Source: Ostrea edulis (taxonomy: Eukaryota). Taken from it: a DNA stretch of 64,000 nt. The stretch covers positions 36,022,001 through 36,086,000 of the forward strand of contig NC_079170.1 of assembly GCF_947568905.1 (NCBI RefSeq), written 5' to 3'. Shown here one piece after another: positions 20,138-34,070 of this stretch (positions within the stretch are counted from its first letter, which is position 1; each line of letters begins with the position of its first letter). The notes under the pieces are model-generated. The model saw only the letters and a program-made list of their open reading frames with translations, did no database searches and was not told the origin of the DNA. The translations under genes and the position numbers were made by a program.

Positions 20138-21347
20138 TTACGTAAAGTAAGGTTCCATTAAGTTGTAGAATATAAGACAGAATATTCCGAATTGATTCCC
20201 CATAGTTTTAATAAGAATAAGTGAAGATATACACAGCGTATTCATTACCTGAAAAGATGAAAGAAAAATATTATTATTATCAGTCAAGGGTACATAGTTA
20301 ACTACAACAAGCGGTATGCCCTGTACACGCCGATTTCTATCTCAATGTTAAAATGCAATATTTTACTTTTCCAAAGTTTTTGCCTTCGATATCGTTACCA
20401 ATTTTAATGATAGCCATTTCCTCATCAATGCTATGCAGTTGTGAGCAATGCACGTATGAATATTGTAAGTATACAAGTAGTACGTCTATTTCAATGCGCG
20501 TATGAATATTGTAAGCATACAAGTAGTACGTCTTTTTCAATGGCTAGGAATTCCAACAAAAATGAAAATAGAATGTAAATATTATGAATTTTTTGAAAAT
20601 ACATGAGTGTATGAACCGTGACGCCTCACTCTAATGCGCCTCATGAAGTATTTTGGCAAATAGTGTCGCTAGCTGTTTATGCCGTCATGTATTTTCGAAT
20701 ATGAAATTTATCTTTTACGTATTTACATTTCCAATGTTTTTGCCTTTGATATATCTATAAATTTTAACCATATCTAATTTCTCATGAATGTGAAGTAATT
20801 GTGAACTATGCGCGTATGAATCTTGATGAATATAGTACGTTTATTTTGATACCTGGGAATATCAATAGAAATAAAAGTAGAATGTAAATAAAGGAATGTT
20901 TTTTATGTTTTGAAAATCAAATAGGGTATGAGCTGTAACGCTTCACGCCAGAATAATTTGCATAAAATTCTAATACGCTTCATGAAGTATTCAGGTGTGA
21001 AACGTCAAGTACCCTTATGTATTTTTGTTTTTCTGAGTTCATGTTATTTCACAACATGGCCCTAAATGGCTATTACACACTGTAAATTAAACATGGGTTA
21101 TTAGAAAAGGAATTTCGCGTCAATAGTTGTCCGAATGAAAGTTTTTCAGCGCTTATCTATCATGAGAAAGAGTGTGTTTTTCAAAATACACAAAATTTCT
21201 TTACCCCCCCCTCCCCCCCCAGTGAAAAGGACATGCAGAGCAGCAGAATATCTACACTCTCTATCGGTTAGTCGATGTCCGATATAATATTACATGTTTA
21301 CGTTGCTAGTATATGATGCATGTATAAAATTATCAATTTGATCACAG

Positions 21348-24300
21348 CTACAAAGTAAAAATAACTTTTCCATACTTATCGTCGTGTTTCTGTTCGAATT
21401 TCCCGATGTGTCCCTCAAGCATTAATTCCTGTAAACAACGAAATGAAGCATTAATAATGATCATTATCCAAAATGTCCCTCAAGCATTAATTCCTGTAAA
21501 CAACGAAATGAAGCATTAATAATAATCATTATCCAATGTGTCCCTCAAGCATTAATTCCTGTAAACAACGAAATGAAGCATTAATAATAATCATCATCCA
21601 ATATGCCCCTCAAACATTAATTCCTGTAAAGAACGAAATGAAGCATTAATAATAATCATTATCCAATATGTCCCTCAAGCATTAATTCCTGTAAACAACG
21701 AAATGAAGCATTAATAATAATCATTATCCAATGTGTCCCTCAAGCATTAATTCCTGTAAACAACGAAATGAGGCATTAATAATAATCATCATCCAATGTG
21801 TCCCTCAAGCATTAATTCCTGTAAACAACGAAATGAAGCATTAATAATAATCATTATCCAATGTGTCCCTCAAGCATTAATTCCTGTAAACAACGAAATG
21901 AAGCATTAATAATAATCATCATCCAATGTGTCCCTCAAGCATTAATTCATGTAAACGACGAAATGAAGCATTAATAATAATCATTATCCAATATGTCCCT
22001 CAATCATTAATTCCTGTAAACAACGAAATGAGGCATTAATAATAATCATCATCCAATGTGTCCCTCAAGCATCAATTCCTGTAAACAACGAAATGAAGCA
22101 TTAATAATAATCATCATCCAATATGTCCCTCAATCATTAATTCATGTAAACGACGAAATGAAGCATTAATAATAATCATTATCCAATGTGTCCCTCAATC
22201 ATTAATTCCTGTAAACAACGAACAACGAAATGAAGCATTAATAATAATCATTATCCAATGTGTCCCTCAAGCATTAATTCCTGTAAACAACGAAATGAGG
22301 CATTAATAATGATCATTATACAATATGTCCCTCAAGCATTAATTCCTGTAAACAACGAAATGAGGCATTAATAATAATCATCACCCAATATGCCTCTCAA
22401 ACATCAATTCCTGTAAACAACGAAATGAGGCATTAATAATAATCATTATCCAATATGTCCCCCAAGGATCAATTCCTGTAAACAACGAAATGAAGCATTA
22501 ATAATAATCATTATCCAATATGTCTCTCAAGCATTAATTCCTGTAAACAACGAAATGAGGCATTAATAATAATCATCATCCAATGTGTCCCTCAATCATT
22601 AATTCATGTAAACGACGAAATGAAGCATTAATAATAATCATTATCCAATATGTCTCTCAAGCATTAATTCCTGTAAACAACGAAATGAGGCATTAATAAT
22701 AATCATTATCTAATATGTCCCTCAAGCCCTCCTGTAAACAACGAAATGAAGCATTAATGATAATCATTTTCCAATGTGTCCCTCAAATATCAATTCCTGT
22801 AAACAACGAAATGAAGACGATCATACCAACTATTTACAATATGTATTATCCAATACGCCTGTTTCGAGATACGAACTCTTCTGTATAGGAGGTGCATTTA
22901 GTGGAACTTTGAATGCCTAGGTGGGGCAGAGTGGATATACAGCCAACGAGGAAAACGATGAAATGTATTAAAAGCGGCTTCTCTTTAAATATGTAAATGT
23001 TTTACCGAAGTGGAAACATACAAACAATGTCATATTTGCAAGAAATATCTTGTATATGGTACTTATGACCAGCGAAATAATGTGATAGGATAAAAATTCT
23101 ATGTATTTTATTACTCCCTAAATACTTATCACTTACTTAGTTTGTGTATCAGTCGAATTCGGGTTATCAAACAACGTATGAGAAACTTTCTGAGTACATT
23201 CACTTACGCTGTGATGAATATATCAGTCCCACTCCCGCGTGTAAACAAATTCTTTCGCGCCTTACTATGTACGAGAGTTCTCCAAAGGGAAATAACTCGG
23301 ACGTATCTCGAAACCGGCGTATTGTTTATCAGTAGAATAATTATTGCTTCTTTCCTCATAATTTCTCTGATTTGGCTGTTTCACGGCACTGTACGTTGAT
23401 TTTGCAGCTAATGCGCTGTCTTTATTCATGTACATGGTATAAGTGGAATTTTTAGCGAGACACAAATTTGGCGATTTTTCCATAAAATGGGTATAGATAT
23501 TTAGCGAGAGCTATTTTTAGCGACTTTAAAGTTTCAAGAGACCTGCTACCTCCAATATGGAATTATTTGTTAGCCATATTTGATTTTAGCGATCTTAACA
23601 CTCTCACTAATAATGCCAAAATTCTTCGTAGAATGGGTAGTTTGAGTTTAAGTGGTATTTTACTTACGTGCAGAATGAAGATTATGAGTTTTACTTACGC
23701 ACATCATGAGAAATTTGATGTTTTCTGATGTGCATAATGAATAATTTGTGTTCAAGTTTTGTTTTCCTTATGCGCATAATAAATAATGTGAGTTTTGGTG
23801 TTGTTTTACTTACGTGCATAATGAGTAACGTGAGTTTATGAGCAAGGTCAGCGGGGAGTCCTGAAAATAATGAGATTACAGTGAAACCTCTTTATTCCCA
23901 CATTCATTAGGAAACAAGTTTTGCTTCAGGTTAGATAGGTTGCCAGTTTTGCATAGTTTTACACATTCATGAATAAAACACAATTAAAGTTTAAATGGAT
24001 TGTACCAGTGTCGGGATAGGAAGGGTTCACTGTACATTTAAAAAGAATATCAAATCTATAGAATCAAGATTTTAGCAATATTTCAGTCCAACAATGGATT
24101 AGAGTTAATAGTTATCAATTCTAACATAAGTATTTAGATACAATAGAAATTAGTACAAAACTAGAAACTACTTATTTGAAAAACGACTACAATGTATATA
24201 TCCTGATTAGACTATGAATGGCTACATAATGCTTATATCCTACTTAGACTTTGAATGAAGCCTATTCCCTGTTGCTGGAATATGGTGTGTGTGAGGCTGT

Positions 24301-27300
24301 GACTTTGAACAGCACCCAACACTCTGCGGATTATCTCTTTCTTGTCCTCTGACAGCTGTTGAAAGGCTGGACTACTCAATATAGAATGCTGAAGGAAATT
24401 GTCATTGTCCCTTTTACCGAGTGGACCCTGAAAGGGATCAATAATATTTAAAATATAACTGTTAAAAGTTGAAGTTAACAGTGATCAATCTCGTGAGTCT
24501 TACGATTTATTAAAAATCATAATCCCGTAATGGACAAAGGCAAAGACACCTGATCCCACTTCTGGTGTGTTCGTGTTTGTCGTACTCTTGATTTTGTATT
24601 TTTTGTCGGAATTACGAGATTGACCACTGTTCGTTATCAATGTGTTTGTTACAAAATATCCGATAAGGATGAAGATAACAATCAGTGAAGATGCAACGTG
24701 TTGTACGATTACGGCTTTATACATTGCGGAGAAGACACACACGCACATAAATATGTTTTACGGATGGCGATCATTCCAATCAATCATTCAAACAGTGTGG
24801 TACAGCAGAGATTAAATTATCACTGCTCTAAATCAAGGACGTGTGTTCTGTAAATACCCCATTGTTTACTCTTGTAAATATAGGCACATGCCAAAGTCAT
24901 TAAGTAGATAGCTGTTCACGATCTTGAAACATAAAAAAAAACGTGCGGGAAACTTAGTAGTATGTATTGCTTGAGTGATGGTTAGGTGGGGGAATTGTCC
25001 CCTTCTGTTCAACACTCTGAGTTCATACCATCATAATCTGTGGTGTTAGGTCCCGCGATGTGTAATAGACACGTACTTGTGATTTAGGGGTTTTATCTAG
25101 TGTGAATACGGTGACTGGGTATTGACAATTGTTTATCTCGACCACCTACCGTTCATTTCCACCACTCGTTGTCAAGATACCCACAGTGCCTACCGCCACA
25201 ACTTCTGGTTTATCAAATACTCACATTCACTGCCTACCGCCACAACCTGTGGTTTATCAAATACTCACAGTCACTGTGCCTACCGCCACAACTTGTGGTT
25301 TATCAAATACTCACAGTCACTGTGCCTACCGCCACAACTTGTGGTTTATCAAATACTCACAGTCACTGTGCCTACCGCCACAACTTGTGGTTTATCAAAT
25401 ACTCACAGTCACTGTGCCTACCGTCACAACCTGTGGTTAATTGAATACTTACAGTGTCTACCGCCACAACTTGTGGTTAATTGAATACTTACAGTGCCTA
25501 CCGCCACAACTTGTGGTTAATTGAATACTTACATTGCCTACTGCCACAACTTGTGGTTAATTGAATACTTACAGTGCCTACCGCCACAACTTGTGGTTTA
25601 TTGAATACTTACATTGCCTACTGCCACAACTTGTGGTTAATTGAATACTTACAGTGTCTCCCGTCACAACTGGTGGTTAATTGAATACTTACAGTGCCTA
25701 CCGCCACAACTTGTGATTTATCAAATACTTACAGTGCCTACCACTACAACTTGTGGTTTATTGAATACTTACAGTGCCTACCGCCACAACTTGTGGTTAA
25801 TTGAATACTTACAGTGCCTACCGCCACAACTTGTGGTTTATTGAATACTTACAGTGCCTACCGCCACAACTTGTGGTTTATTGAATACTTACAGTGACTA
25901 CTGCCACAACTTGTGGTTTATTGAATACTTACAGTGACTACTGCCACAACTTGTGGTTAATTGAATACTTACAGTGCCTACAGCCACAACTTGTGGTTTA
26001 TTGAATACTTACATTGCCTACTGCCACAACTTGTGGTTTATTGAATACTTACAGTGACTACTGCCACAACTTGTGGTTAATTGAATACTTACAGTGCCTA
26101 CAGCCACAACTTGTGGTTTATTGAATACTTACATTGCCTACTGCCACAACTTGTGGTTAATTGAATACTTACAGTGCCTACCGCCACAACCTGTGGTTAA
26201 TTGAATACTTACAGTGTCTACCGCCACAACTTGTGGTTAATTGAATACTTACAGTGCCTACCGCCACAACTTGTGGTTAATTGAATACTTACAGTGCCTC
26301 CAGCCACAACTTGTGGTTAATTGAATAGTTACAGTGCCTACCGCCACAACTTGTGGTTAATTGAATACTTACATTGCCTACTGCCACAACTTGTGGTTAA
26401 TTGAATAATTACAGTGTCTACTGCCACATCTTGTGGTTAATTGAATACTTACAGTACCTACTGCCACAACCTGTGGTTAATTGAATACTTACAGTGCCTA
26501 CCGCCACAACTGGTGGTTTATTGAATACTTACATTGCCTACTGCCACAACTTGTGGTTAATTGAATAATTACAGTGTCTACTGCCACATCTTGTGGTTAA
26601 TTGAATACTTACAGTACCTACTGCCACAACCTGTGGTTAATTGAATACTTACAGTGCCTACCGCCACAACTGGTGGTTTATTGAATACTTACAGTGCCTA
26701 CTGCCACAACTTGTGGTTTGGGAGTTGTGGTTGTCGTTGTTGTCGTCGTCGTTGTCGTCGTTGTTGAGGTTGTTGTTGTTTTGCTGTATTCCATCTCCAT
26801 GTGCTAATCACAGAAATAATTTATGTATCGATTAAAATACTGTAGAATTGCAAATTAATGTCTTGTTATTGTTTATTTGTGTGTTTTGTAAACACCCCAT
26901 TCGAGATGTTTATTTCAATCACGGATAGACGTTACCATCTTTAGGTAAATTGCCAAAACGCTTGGCCTATTGATGGCGCTTATTGCCGTAACAGTAAAAT
27001 TTGTTTTCATCATGCCAACACCTACCACCTTATTTAATCTCATATCCGAAAGAACCGTAACTGACTTCAAATACCACATGATTGGCAGAGGAATAGTCAC
27101 TGCCTATGTCAAACGTGTTAGGTTTGCAAGACACCCAGAATGAGATTCTTCCAGTTGCAAAGCGAGCGCACGAACTAAGCTACTGCTCACTTGGTATAGG
27201 ACCACCACGAAACTACGAGAAGTAGTATTCAACGGAAGCTGATCAAATCACCGTATTTTCATGTACAACCTTTTCCAACGACAGCTTACATCTAATACCA

Positions 27301-27762
27301 AATATGTTGATACATGTACATCTTACCATGAGTAGATAGGACTCCAGGCTTTTCTGTTGTATGGATGTTCCAACTGCATTAAACGAAGAGTAAATAGTCA
27401 AATACATTAATACGAAAGATCAGTGTAGCGACTAAATTTATTTCTTATATGAAATGCCAGCCTTAAAATGGATAATAAACTTTGCCAATCAATTTCAGAC
27501 AGAATTGAATGATATAAAAAAGAACCTGACCACTTAAAGCCAGAAGTACTTTTAAAAATCCTTTATCGTCGACATAACGAACAAGGACACCATTTTCAGC
27601 TGCTGCCACCAACTCCACAATGGTGAGCTGGGTATCAGCTGGCAGGGTATGAAAACCTGGGTCCTTGTGAATAAGTCCCAGTATTTCCAGTAAGTCGCGC
27701 TTGTTGTTATCACACAATGCCACAGACAGCGATAAGATGAAAATATACCCAACTGTCTTCAT
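21348..27762 (-). CDS. Gene A: secreted protein with signal peptide, two ~60-aa helical repeats, a Thr-rich linker and KR/GKR sites (217 or 233 aa); family not recognised
   Basis: Coding exons: 27762-27531 (MKTVGYIFILSLSVALCDNNKRDLL...KVLLALS, phase 1), 27373-27327 (47 nt), 26803-26693 (HMEMEYSK, T-rich tract, PKPQVVAVGT), 24427-24244 (GPLGKRDND...GFIQSL, phase 1), 23860-23814 (47 nt, RLPADLAHKLTLLIMH). Terminal exon is either 22796-22764 (ELIFEGHIGK*) or 21428-21348 (ELMLEGHIGKFEQKHDDKYGKVIFTL*). All junctions are GT-AG with matching phases, and both domains use the same phase-1/47-nt/phase-0 exon pattern as gene B. A 5' UTR exon ends at 28241 (CAG/GTATGT). Confidence 0.8.
21408..22816 (-). 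repeat. 65-nt tandem array (22 units) made of gene A's last-intron acceptor plus the start of the exon
   Basis: Minus-strand unit: ataatgattattattaatgcttcatttcgttgtttacAG/GAATTAATGCTTGAGGGACACATTGG. Confidence 0.92.
23655..23830 (-). repeat. About 5 decayed tandem copies of gene A's exon-6 end plus donor
   Basis: Plus-strand acttacgtgca-like motifs near 23660, 23693, 23725, 23766 and 23808 (the last is the real donor). Confidence 0.65.
25170..26718 (-). repeat. 40-nt (and 46-nt variant) tandem array, ~38 units, made of gene A's exon-4 end plus donor
   Basis: Minus-strand unit: accacaagttgtggcggtaggcact/GTAAGTattcaatta; the 46-nt units carry GTGAGT. Contains the palindrome ccacaacttgtgg. Confidence 0.95.
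26895..27200 (-). mobile_element. Decayed tRNA-head SINE in a gene A intron
   Basis: tcatatccgaaagaaccgt and catgccaacacctacc are the reverse complement of the body seen at 16.9 and 57.5 kb. Confidence 0.6.
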
Positions 27763-32276: not shown

Positions 32277-34070
32277 ATGAAGACCCTAATTCTGTCAATG
32301 CTGGTGGGTGTCTGCTTTGCTGGTCTCGTGGTGAGTGTTTCTATTTTCTCCAAAGTGGTATTATCAAGACGGCTCAACATAGGTTAAGCAAAATTGGTAA
32401 ATTATTTATGTTTTCCCAGAATGTCGACAGAAACAAATTTAATAAAACATTTCTTTATGTTCTTATTTATCAAAACCTAGTGAGGAAAAAAATTCACAGG
32501 AACTTGTTGATAATCTTTTTCCATATATAATCGTGACGGAATATTTCCCCTCGTAAAAACTCTATCAACAAGGAAAACACAATCACCCCTTCTTCGTCTC
32601 CATCATTTCTACCCTTTCACTAAGTATGATGTTGCTTTTATCAATCTGTACTTAATTTCTTTCTAATTCATTTTTACTTGATGTGGAATACATGTATCTT
32701 TTTTTCTTGTCGATGAAATATTTTGTAATTCTGTTAATGAATGAATAATGATTGATACAAGTTTTAAAACCGTTATGATTTCTGTATGAAAACGCCCGTT
32801 TTTCCTGGCCTTTGTACTTTAGTTTTATGTTAGATTGTCTCTGGTTTTATTATCTATTTCTTGTATGTCAGGAGATTTGTTTCCGTAGGTCGTGAGTTCA
32901 ACCCCGGGTAAGGGCAAAAGTGGGCATCCATTTCTTTTTTAAGATACATGTATATCTGTGCTTTATGTTACTTAGGATATTTATGTCTACGTAATAGTTT
33001 ATAAGTTTTATGAAGCAAATGTAAAATCAAGCAATTTAGGAAGATATGTTTATTTTGTATTAATTGCTTTAAATCGAGATGTTTCCCTCAGTTTACGTTA
33101 CGAATGTGATATACCATGTGCTTGTAAAAGTCATAGTTTATCCAGGGGGTGATATGTCCCACGTGATTGGGACAAACACAAGCTTCTTTTTAGGAACGCG
33201 ATACTCTAGACGCTTTGAAACAACTTCATCTCACCAACTTCATGACCACTTTGACAACAGACCAACAGCTCTTATTGATTGACATAGTAGCCCAGGCAGA
33301 CGCCGGAACTCTGACGGACTTCACAAACACGATCGGGTATTCCAGGATACTAGAAATCTTTATCGGTGGGTAATGTTTTCACAATGTATCCAGGCAGGTG
33401 CTTTCTATATCATAACATTGAAAACTATCGTTATCATCATCAATGTCTTAAAAGAAAATGATTTCTCAGTCTTTTCGTTAATTTAGATCCCAGATGTACA
33501 TGTATTAAGCGTGATCCGTTGTAGACATGTTTTATGTCCGTTTTATCAAAATCACATTTACAGCCCTAAGTGCTGACGATGAAAGAATCTTCAAGAATTA
33601 TATTATACAGGTAAGTTCTCAGATCACCTTTGATTCAGATAATTATTGTGATTATGGGATCACATACATACTAAACTTTGTGATATTGATTATGGGATTA
33701 CACACATAACATTGTATATTAATTATGGGATTAAACACATAACACTGTGATATTGACTATGGGATTAGACACATAACATTGTGATATTGATTATGGGATC
33801 ACATACATACTAAACATTGGGATATTTCTTTTGATTGTGGGATTACACAAGTACATACCACTATGCTATTTCTTTTGACCAGAAAAAAGAAATAAATATA
33901 CAATTTGTCGTATCCCTTACACTTTCATCCTTCACATTTTGTCGACACAGATTCTACAGTTATTTGTCTAGAATATACTAATTATATTACACTGGTTTCA
34001 GCGATTAACATTAGAGGCACAGGGTCCAATAAATGCACATCATGGTGTCGCTACAGGACACGGAAAATGA
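32277..34070 (+). CDS. Gene B: 113-aa secreted paralog of gene A with one helical domain
   Basis: Exons 32277-32330 (MKTLILSMLVGVCFAGLV, GTGAGT), 33194-33365 (ERDTLDALKQ...LTTDQQLLLIDIVAQADAGTLTDFTNTIGYSRILEIFI, phase 1), 33564-33610 (47 nt, ALSADDERIFKNYIIQ, GTAAGT), 34002-34070 (RLTLEAQGPINAHHGVATGHGK*). Exons 2-3 are missed by the ORF track. Confidence 0.85.
33640..33860. repeat. Degenerate ~33-nt minisatellite in a gene B intron
   Basis: tgtgatattgattatgggattacacacataaca x~7. Confidence 0.8.

What the first reader, a model, noticed from the sequence alone, without database searches (positions are those of the whole stretch)
21348..22816. A 65-nt satellite that is 22 tandem copies of gene A's last splice acceptor, each with its own stop-terminated micro-tail
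Seen: on the gene strand each unit reads ...ttcatttcgttgtttacAG/GAA TTA ATG CTT GAG GGA CAC ATT GGA TAA, a strong polypyrimidine-CAG acceptor in the phase that follows exon 6. Units encode ELMLEGHIG*, ELMFEGHIG*, ELILGGHIG*, ELMFERHIG* and similar. The transcript-proximal unit gives ELIFEGHIGK*, and only the last unit runs into unique sequence (ELMLEGHIGKFEQKHDDKYGKVIFTL*). The xLxLE start matches gene B's last exon (RLTLE) and gene A's exon 4 (HMEME). Three units have lost the AG (near 21948, 22143, 22606). Several variant positions are synonymous or stop-preserving (CAC/CAT, TTA/TTG, GGA/GGG, TAA/TGA). Known: a C-terminal Gly or Gly-Lys is the substrate for peptide amidation. Inference: the array may act as a cassette of alternative terminal micro-exons, or may have truncated the protein by capturing splicing at the first copy.
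Basis: partly seen in the sequence, partly recalled or inferred. Interest (0 to 1): 0.88.

Follow-up and report, generated by a model that had tools for sequence, protein, structure and literature searches.

The report
Splice-acceptor minisatellite in an oyster gene
A 1.4-kb tandem repeat in an oyster gene comes from repeated copying of the junction between the last intron and the last exon, leaving 19 look-alike splice acceptors in a row; it looks like a young, neutrally drifting by-product and not a designed set of alternative protein ends.

Summary
Window 21409-22816 is a 65-nt array of about 22 units. On the minus strand each unit reads branch-point-like motif, pyrimidine tract, CAG, then a 9-codon ORF and a stop, in the phase left by the upstream exon (donor 23814/23813).

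Homologues from Magallana gigas and Pinctada fucata confirm the gene model. They show that the most distal unit plus the unique tail is the ancestral last exon. A Magallana-like genomic contig holds the orthologous last intron: about 237 nt, one acceptor, no repeat. The array is therefore specific to the window's lineage.

- The units have no poly(A) signal and no donor, so they can only be alternative 3' splice sites of one terminal exon.
- Synonymous and non-synonymous changes fit neutrality.
- The three AG-less units share a linked second change, so they are copies of one mutant unit.
- One unit is frameshifted.

No transcript evidence could be reached, so which acceptor is used is unknown.

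The closest known kind is the group of human minisatellites that span an exon-intron boundary and repeat a donor site (F7, IFI6, CBS). This is the acceptor-side version. The same gene also carries two donor-side arrays.

The "cassette of micro-exons" reading is unsupported. Capture of splicing by an upstream copy remains plausible.

The parts
21409..22816 (-). 65-nt minisatellite of 22 units. Each unit holds about 37 nt of intron 3' end (TTAAT and TTCAT branch-point-like motifs, pyrimidine tract, CAG) plus about 28 nt of exon start.
   Evidence: TRF; unit list and alignment; core motif 19 matches against 0 expected
21348..21428 (-). Ancestral terminal coding exon of gene A, from the acceptor G at 21429 to the TAG at 21350-21348. 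It encodes ELMLEGHIGKFEQKHDDKYGKVIFTL*.
   Evidence: Aligns with the last exon of the Magallana-like orthologue (EMMLEGHGGRFSGTHDDE*, L012:696-752) and with the tail of Pinctada P0002
22749..22813 (-). Transcript-proximal unit, acceptor G at 22797, tail ELIFEGHIGK*. It keeps the ancestral AAA (Lys) where all inner units have TAA. It is the most diverged unit.
22688..22748 (-). Unit 2, 61 nt, with a 4-nt deletion just after the acceptor. Its tail is frameshifted to EGLRDILDNDYY*.
22558..22622 (-). AG-less unit (CAT in place of CAG) that also carries a linked T-to-C in the pyrimidine tract.
22096..22160 (-). AG-less unit with the same two linked changes.
21901..21965 (-). AG-less unit with the same two linked changes.
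23814..23860 (-). The donor is CAC|gtaagt with GT at 23813-23812, phase 0.
   Evidence: Sequence; 85% nt identity to L012:402-465; matches P0019 and P0002
24244..24427 (-). Exon encoding the second domain of gene A (GPLGKRDNDNF...IQSL).
   Evidence: 72% aa identity to P0019
26702..26803 (-). Exon encoding HMEMEY plus a Thr-rich linker, ending ...PKPQVVA|gtaggc.
   Evidence: matches P0002 and P0022
27327..27373 (-). Exon 2, encoding (V)GTSIQQKSLESYLLM.
   Evidence: Near-identical to P0019 residues 78-93 (15 of 16)
27531..27762 (-). Exon 1, with the ATG at 27762, a signal-peptide-like N-terminus and the first domain.
   Evidence: 71% aa identity to P0019; the same ORF occurs on 13 Logan contigs of this species
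20840..20845 (-). First canonical AATAAA downstream of the stop codon. There is no AATAAA or ATTAAA anywhere inside the array.

Best explanation
The array is a lineage-specific minisatellite. It arose when a ~55-65-nt segment spanning the junction of the last intron and the terminal exon of a secreted-protein gene was duplicated in tandem and then amplified. This part is shown.

The distal copy is the original exon. The other 21 copies are by-products. Their stop codons come from the AT-rich intron sequence that follows the exon fragment in each unit. The units drift neutrally and are copied about as blocks. They are not maintained one by one as coding micro-exons. This part is shown as far as sequence can show it.

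The units have no poly(A) signal and no donor. The only way they can act is as 19 competing 3' splice sites of one terminal exon.

My inferred mechanism is that splicing from the 23814 donor is captured at least partly by upstream copies. The protein then ends ...LLIMH-ELxxEGHIG(K) and the rest of the array becomes 3' UTR.

This would be tolerated for three reasons:
- The exon is the last one, so no nonsense-mediated decay is expected.
- Every intact unit still supplies the conserved xLxLE end of the second domain.
- Only a poorly conserved tail is lost. Many relatives end naturally in G or GK right there.
For: - Array and units.
- Gene model and phase.
- Orthologue with a ~237-nt last intron, a single acceptor and no repeat: L012.
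- No poly(A) signal in the array; first AATAAA at 20845.
- No GT downstream of the AG within a unit: unit sequence.
- Neutral pattern: 6 of 18 possible synonymous changes against 12 of 72 possible non-synonymous changes, p = 0.18. A wrong-frame control gives the same 6:12.
- The ORF part is at least as variable as the flanks: 12 of 30 sites against 6 of 35.
- Linked variants in the three AG-less units, and the frameshift unit.
- The invariant Glu of the family's xLxxE motif lies in the unit's micro-ORF, and relatives end in ...VGK...VVG...GFG.
- The unit acceptors score as well as the gene's authentic acceptors on a crude pyrimidine/AG score.
Against: - No RNA evidence of any kind. I found no spliced product of this gene, and none from Logan for its Magallana orthologue, in the protein collections.
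- The distal tail ORF is still open. The distal half of the array is the more homogeneous half: 3.2 against 6.0 mean pairwise differences. Both points are equally compatible with use of the authentic distal acceptor alone.
- The splice-signal part of the unit is somewhat less variable than the ORF part (p = 0.054). This could hint at constraint on the acceptors.
Confidence: 0.5

Rival explanations
1. The origin is the same, but the pseudo-acceptors are silent. Only the authentic distal acceptor (21429) is used, helped by terminal-exon definition through exon sequence and the poly(A) signal ~500 nt downstream. The array is then simply 1.4 kb of extra intron with no effect on the protein.
For: - The distal tail ORF is intact and begins like the orthologue's tail: GK/GR-F...HDD.
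- In several human boundary minisatellites only the authentic site is used: F7, LMNB2, PDGFA (PMC1557585).
- The distal units are nearly identical to the authentic exon start.
Against: - Nineteen upstream sites have the same branch-point-like motif, pyrimidine tract and CAG|G as the authentic one, and they are transcribed first.
- In the human donor arrays the used site is the most upstream one, which there happens to be the authentic site. Here the most upstream site is a copy.
Confidence: 0.33
2. The array is a selected cassette. Regulated or stochastic choice among the acceptors produces a set of secreted proteins with different 9-10-residue C-terminal tails ending in Gly or Gly-Lys, possibly amidated.
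For: - About ten distinct tails are encoded.
- C-terminal G or GK is common in the family.
- The splice-signal part of the unit varies a little less than the ORF part.
Against: - The array is absent from the Magallana-like orthologue.
- Seven of the 18 in-frame units with an intact AG encode the same tail.
- Synonymous and non-synonymous changes fit neutrality, and a wrong frame gives the same ratio.
- AG-less units have been copied three times, and one unit is frameshifted.
- No unit has its own poly(A) signal or donor.
Confidence: 0.07
3. The feature has no biological consequence because gene A is not expressed (a decaying duplicate), or because the array length is an assembly artefact.
For: I found no transcript-derived protein for gene A. 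Two ORFs inside or next to the array, one in the intron upstream and one in the neighbouring intron were not on record in other assemblies.
Against: - All six coding exons are intact, with consensus splice sites and 71-72% aa identity to the Magallana protein.
- A TATAAATA motif sits ~35 nt upstream of the ATG.
- The units carry many individual variants in a non-periodic order, which a collapsed or expanded assembly would not produce.
- Short-read contigs of 13 samples end where the neighbouring 40-nt array begins, as expected for real arrays.
Confidence: 0.05

Closest known systems
Minisatellites whose first monomer spans an exon-intron boundary and repeats a splice DONOR: human F7 IVS7 (37 bp, 5-9 copies), IFI6/6-16 (25 pseudo-sites), CBS IVS13, LMNB2, PDGFA intron 4. 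Reviewed in Borensztajn et al. 2006, PMC1557585.
   Same: A tandem array whose end monomer contains authentic exon sequence plus a splice site, so the site is repeated many times in near-identical form. It is present in one lineage. It serves as a natural test bed for splice-site choice.
   Different: - This array is on the acceptor side: the last monomer, not the first, is the authentic one.
- It sits at a terminal exon.
- Each copy carries an in-frame stop.
- It is in a bivalve.
- Under 5'-to-3' choice the first site met is a copy and not the authentic site. The array is therefore not automatically harmless, unlike the donor arrays.

Five full-text searches found no described acceptor-side case. 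That is not proof that none exists.
Tandem alternative acceptors (NAGNAG and nearby AGs; scanning from the branch point to the first AG, Smith et al. 1993, cited in PMC1557585)
   Same: Several acceptors in a row could give small differences at the protein level.
   Different: The sites here are 65 nt apart, and each has its own branch-point-like motif and pyrimidine tract. They are complete competing 3' splice sites, not AGs served by one branch point.
Arrays of tandemly duplicated alternative exons (mutually exclusive exon clusters such as Dscam; from general knowledge)
   Same: They arise from tandem duplication of an exon together with its acceptor.
   Different: Those exons are full length, have donors, are conserved across species and are under purifying selection. 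None of this holds here.
Peptide amidation signals (C-terminal Gly, or Gly followed by basic residues; general knowledge of PAM and carboxypeptidase processing)
   Same: The unit tails end in Gly or Gly-Lys, the protein has a signal-peptide-like N-terminus, and relatives show G-[KR]-[KR] between domains.
   Different: There is no biochemical evidence. The product is a ~200-residue helical protein, not a short neuropeptide. The Gly is inherited from the ancestral exon, not created by the array.

Membership tests
Boundary-spanning minisatellite that repeats a splice site | Tandem array of 10-100-nt units | tested here: met
   65 nt x 21.6 copies, 91% matches
Boundary-spanning minisatellite that repeats a splice site | The end monomer contains authentic exon sequence and the authentic splice site | tested here: met
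   The last unit continues into the tail that is homologous to the Magallana-like and Pinctada last exons
Boundary-spanning minisatellite that repeats a splice site | The other monomers carry pseudo-sites (near-)identical to the authentic one | tested here: met
   19 of 22 units keep the pyrimidine tract and CAG|G; 3 have CAT
Boundary-spanning minisatellite that repeats a splice site | Copy number is polymorphic within the species | not testable with these tools
   Contigs of other individuals that reach the array could not be retrieved
Boundary-spanning minisatellite that repeats a splice site | Splicing pattern: authentic site only, or a few neighbouring pseudo-sites | not testable with these tools
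   No transcript data; no spliced product in the protein collections
Cassette of alternative terminal exons | Each alternative terminal exon has its own poly(A) signal | tested here: not met
   No AATAAA or ATTAAA in 21409-22816; the first is at 20845
Cassette of alternative terminal exons | Purifying selection on the coding part of the copies | tested here: not met
   Synonymous 6 of 18 against non-synonymous 12 of 72, p = 0.18; the same ratio in a wrong frame; one frameshifted unit
Cassette of alternative terminal exons | Conserved in related species | tested here: not met
   The Magallana-like orthologue has a ~237-nt intron, one acceptor and no repeat. Only one other lineage could be examined.
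Cassette of alternative terminal exons | Transcripts that use different copies | not testable with these tools
   No RNA data were accessible
Amidated secretory protein | Entry into the secretory pathway | tested here: inconclusive
   The N-terminus MKTVGYIFILSLSVALC looks like a signal peptide, but no predictor was run
Amidated secretory protein | C-terminal Gly or Gly-basic in the precursor | tested here: met
   The unit tails end ...HIG* or ...HIGK*. Relatives end VGK, VVG, GFG; gene B ends GHGK.
Amidated secretory protein | An amide at the mature C-terminus | not testable with these tools
   Needs mass spectrometry

The most novel reading that the evidence does not exclude
The array works as an acceptor ladder. 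Choice among 19 near-equal 3' splice sites, regulated or stochastic, gives one gene a population of secreted proteins with slightly different, possibly amidated, C-terminal ends. Selection keeps the splice signals of the units intact while the tails are free to vary. The same gene's two donor-side arrays would then point to a locus-specific process that amplifies splice junctions.
Probability: 0.07. Interest if true: 0.7.

Novelty: new variant of a known kind. Interest (0 to 1): 0.4.

Why it matters
Minisatellites that repeat a splice donor (F7, IFI6, CBS) have been used to work out how the spliceosome picks one site among identical ones. I did not find an acceptor-side counterpart in the literature I searched.

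This locus offers 19 complete, near-identical 3' splice sites spaced 65 nt apart in front of the authentic one. The same gene carries about 35 repeated donors behind another exon. One natural gene could therefore test several ideas on both kinds of site:
- choice by proximity,
- first-come-first-served choice,
- terminal-exon definition.

It also shows how such an array can be tolerated. It sits at the last exon, and every copy still encodes the conserved end of the protein domain.

If the array turns out to be silent or merely truncating, it is an ordinary lineage-specific minisatellite of modest interest.

Tried and rejected
- **Transcript evidence.** I searched 5.8 billion proteins with the Pinctada homologue, with a profile carrying gene A's own exons, and with the exon-4 segment to catch partial spliced products. 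Only genomic ORFs and the Magallana and Pinctada proteins came back. Nothing spliced from this species was found.
- **Other individuals.** Exact look-ups of ORFs inside or near the array and in the two introns upstream found nothing on record. Only the exon-1 region was retrievable.
- **A closer relative.** L001 (JGI metagenome; 85% aa and 75% nt identity over exon 1) is only 2.2 kb and stops after exon 2.
- **Metagenome scan** with a degenerate acceptor-plus-ELMLEGH pattern. It returned four loci, none orthologous. Two of them (L015, L016) are a distant family member.
- **Exact look-up of the Magallana protein's locus** failed.
- **RNA family or structure.** Rfam found nothing in the window. 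Three units folded as RNA give z = -1.6. An RNA-structure role was rejected.
- **Dispersed satellite or transposon.** There are no other copies in the window and none in the scan's index.
- **Coding on the plus strand.** There is no ORF of 50 aa or more across the array.
- **Family identity of gene A.** There were no significant Pfam hits, all being below the gathering cut-offs. There was no PDB fold match, and only the family itself in the AlphaFold DB clusters. The Atlas hits are weak, 0.69.

Full report
**What is there**

Tandem Repeats Finder reports a 65-nt array at 21409-22816 with 21.6 copies and 91% matches. Anchoring on CATTTCGT gives 22 units on the minus strand. Nineteen are exactly 65 nt. 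One is 61 nt with a 4-nt deletion, one is 72 nt with a 7-nt insertion, and the last runs into unique sequence. A 37-nt core matches 19 times within 3 mismatches against 0 in shuffles, and only here in the window.

Each unit reads, 5' to 3' on the minus strand:
- an AT-rich spacer with TTAAT,
- CTTCATTTCGTTGTTTACAG,
- GAA TTA ATG CTT GAG GGA CAC ATT GGA TAA.

**The gene**

Exon 1 (ATG at 27762) was searched against 1.8 billion representative proteins. This found a mollusc-wide family of uncharacterised secreted proteins. Members come from Pinctada fucata (A0A194AMB2), Mya, Saccostrea, Mizuhopecten, Mytilus and Batillaria. A profile search added Magallana gigas K1RX09, which is 71-72% identical over exons 1 and 4.

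These homologues fix the model:

| Exon | Window coordinates (minus strand) |
|---|---|
| 1 | 27762-27531 |
| 2 | 27373-27327 |
| 3 | 26803-26702 |
| 4 | 24427-24244 |
| 5 | 23860-23814 |
| last | begins at 21428 |

Exon 5 ends in phase 0 (CAC|gtaagt), so every unit's GAA is in frame.

The protein has two copies of a helical domain of about 75 residues. Each copy ends in a helix of the form YLIxxLxxE. The Glu of that motif is invariant in a seven-member alignment. In the second domain it is encoded in the first five codons of the last exon, and therefore in every unit.

There is no Pfam family, no PDB fold match and only the family itself in the AlphaFold DB clusters.

**Which copy is the original**

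Two homologues give the same answer.
- The Magallana protein continues ...LLIMH-EMMLEGHGGRFSGTHDD...
- The Pinctada protein continues ...FIMK-EMTLESHHGHRENTKHG....

These align with the last unit plus the unique tail, ELMLEGHIGKFEQKHDD...

A Magallana-like genomic contig (L012, Logan SRR25433397) carries exon 4, exon 5 and the last exon on 934 nt. Its last intron is about 237 nt. It has a single acceptor (...tttttgtatcacag|GAAATGATG...), the tail is EMMLEGHGGRFSGTHDDE*, and TRF finds no repeat. In the alignment, L012's intron end and exon start match the unit on both sides of the AG.

The array is therefore derived, specific to the window's lineage, and built from about 37 nt of intron end plus about 28 nt of exon start.

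The stop codon of the units falls where the exon fragment meets the intron-derived spacer. The first unit still has the ancestral AAA (Lys) followed by TGA. All inner units share TAA at that codon, so they descend from one mutated unit.

**What the units can and cannot do**

There is no AATAAA or ATTAAA inside the array. The first one after the stop codon is at 20845. Downstream of the AG a unit contains no GT at all. The units therefore cannot be separate terminal exons or internal cassette exons. They can only be alternative 3' splice sites of one terminal exon. Whatever lies downstream of the chosen site becomes 3' UTR.

On a crude score (pyrimidines at -21 to -3, YAG|G, AG-free zone, YTNAY motif) the 19 intact acceptors equal the gene's authentic acceptors. 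They outrank everything else in the intron except one site at 22917.

**Selection**

Against the consensus micro-ORF, 6 of 18 possible synonymous or stop-preserving changes are seen, and 12 of 72 possible non-synonymous ones (p = 0.18). Among transitions alone the counts are 6 of 11 against 6 of 19 (p = 0.27). Reading the same bases in a wrong frame gives the same 6:12 split.

Other points that argue against constraint on the units as coding sequence:
- The ORF part is not better conserved than the rest: 12 of 30 variable sites against 6 of 35 in the 19 clean units (p = 0.054).
- The three AG-less units share a second, linked change. They record one mutation that was then copied.
- Unit 2 is frameshifted.
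- Seven units encode the identical tail ELMLEGHIG.
- The upstream nine units differ more from each other than the downstream ten: 6.0 against 3.2 mean pairwise differences.

All this is the pattern of a neutrally evolving, block-copied minisatellite. The slightly lower variability of the splice-signal part is the only hint in the other direction, and it is weak.

**Usage**

This could not be tested. No spliced product of gene A, full-length or partial, is in the searched protein collections. The species is present there only as short genomic contigs. Look-ups of ORFs inside or near the array and in the two introns upstream failed.

By inference, the upstream copies are transcribed first and lie closer to the donor. 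I therefore consider at least partial capture the most likely outcome (about one in two). Exclusive use of the authentic distal site comes second (about one in three).

Capture would be mild in effect. The exon is terminal, every intact unit still supplies the xLxLE end of the domain, and the lost tail is poorly conserved (KFEQKHDDKYGKVIFTL, RFSGTHDDE, HRENTKHGHQHH...). Many relatives end at this point in G or GK (Mya ...HIVGK, Mizuhopecten ...PVVG, Mytilus ...PGFG, gene B ...GHGK).

**Comparison with what is known**

Borensztajn et al. 2006 (PMC1557585) list human minisatellites whose first monomer spans an exon-intron boundary, so that the donor is repeated: F7 IVS7, IFI6/6-16 (25 pseudo-sites, of which the two nearest the authentic donor are also used), CBS, LMNB2 and PDGFA. 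In F7 a 5'-to-3' scanning process selects the most upstream, authentic donor.

The present array is the mirror image on the acceptor side. Here the most upstream site is a copy, so the array is not automatically harmless. That may explain why I found no described acceptor-side case in five full-text searches, and why this one sits at a terminal exon. This last point is my inference.

I file it as a new variant of a known kind.

**Context noticed**

The same gene has two donor-side arrays of the classic kind.
- One is a 40-nt array of 37.7 copies starting in the last ~17 nt of exon 3. About 35 donor-like GCR|GTAGGC copies follow. It is absent from the orthologous contig L017.
- The other is a short, degenerate 42-nt array at the exon-5 donor. 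It is absent from L012.

Suppose founder duplications of 40-65 nt fell at random in a ~3.5-kb pre-array gene with 10 junctions. The chance that all three span a junction is then roughly 0.003. That estimate is post hoc, but worth a genome-wide check.

**Verdict**

The origin is established and the array is lineage-specific. The cassette interpretation is not supported. Truncation by capture is plausible but untested. Interest is moderate, as a natural model for 3' splice-site choice.

Noticed in passing
window 25183-26718 (minus strand): A 40-nt array of 37.7 copies whose first unit contains the last ~17 nt of exon 3 (...CCACAAGTTGTGGCA|GTAGGC). The donor-like motif recurs 35 times. All minus-strand frames through the array contain stops. 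The orthologous exon in another oyster (L017, ENA ERZ27292764) has a single donor and no array.
   Followed up: partly
window 23660-23838 (minus strand): A degenerate ~42-nt repeat starts in the last codons of exon 5. Besides the authentic CAC|GTAAGT at 23814/23813 there are two further intact GTAAGT copies near 23697 and 23666, and two decayed ones. It is absent from the Magallana-like contig L012.
   Followed up: partly
window 21348-27762: All three tandem arrays inside gene A span an exon-intron junction. A naive random-placement estimate gives about 0.003, and it is post hoc. This may point to a junction-biased duplication process, or to ascertainment.
   Followed up: no
gene A (27762-21348, minus strand) and gene B (about 33190-34070, plus strand): Both belong to a mollusc-wide family of secreted proteins with two helical domains. 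The family has no Pfam family and no PDB fold match (AlphaFold model pLDDT 73). Several members have G-[KR]-[KR] between the domains and end in G or GK, which suggests proteolytic processing and possibly amidation.
   Followed up: partly
L015:1078-1200 and L016:1723-1751 (JAAUYG01 contigs in the metagenome collection): An exon starts TAG|GAG CTG ATG TTG GAA GGC CAT TCT GGT, that is ELMLEGHSG. It continues into what looks like the start of another domain of the same family (QVLNQIHDVLVTSDELTDKQKSAIFERIA). In that organism the motif acts as a linker between domains.
   Followed up: no
window 22917 (minus strand): A pyrimidine-rich TAG|G site 120 nt upstream of the array scores as well as the array's acceptors on a crude score. 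If used in phase 0 it would add AFKVPLNAPPIQKSSYLETGVLDNTYCK*.
   Followed up: no
window 21215-21232 (minus strand): A G8-A-G8 tract lies in the presumed 3' UTR of gene A, about 120 nt after the stop codon.
   Followed up: no
L002-L011 (Logan runs ERR138685xx and SRR254450xx): Short-read contigs of at least 13 samples of the same species carry exon 1 unchanged. They end about where the 40-nt array begins, as expected if that array is real in those individuals.
   Followed up: partly
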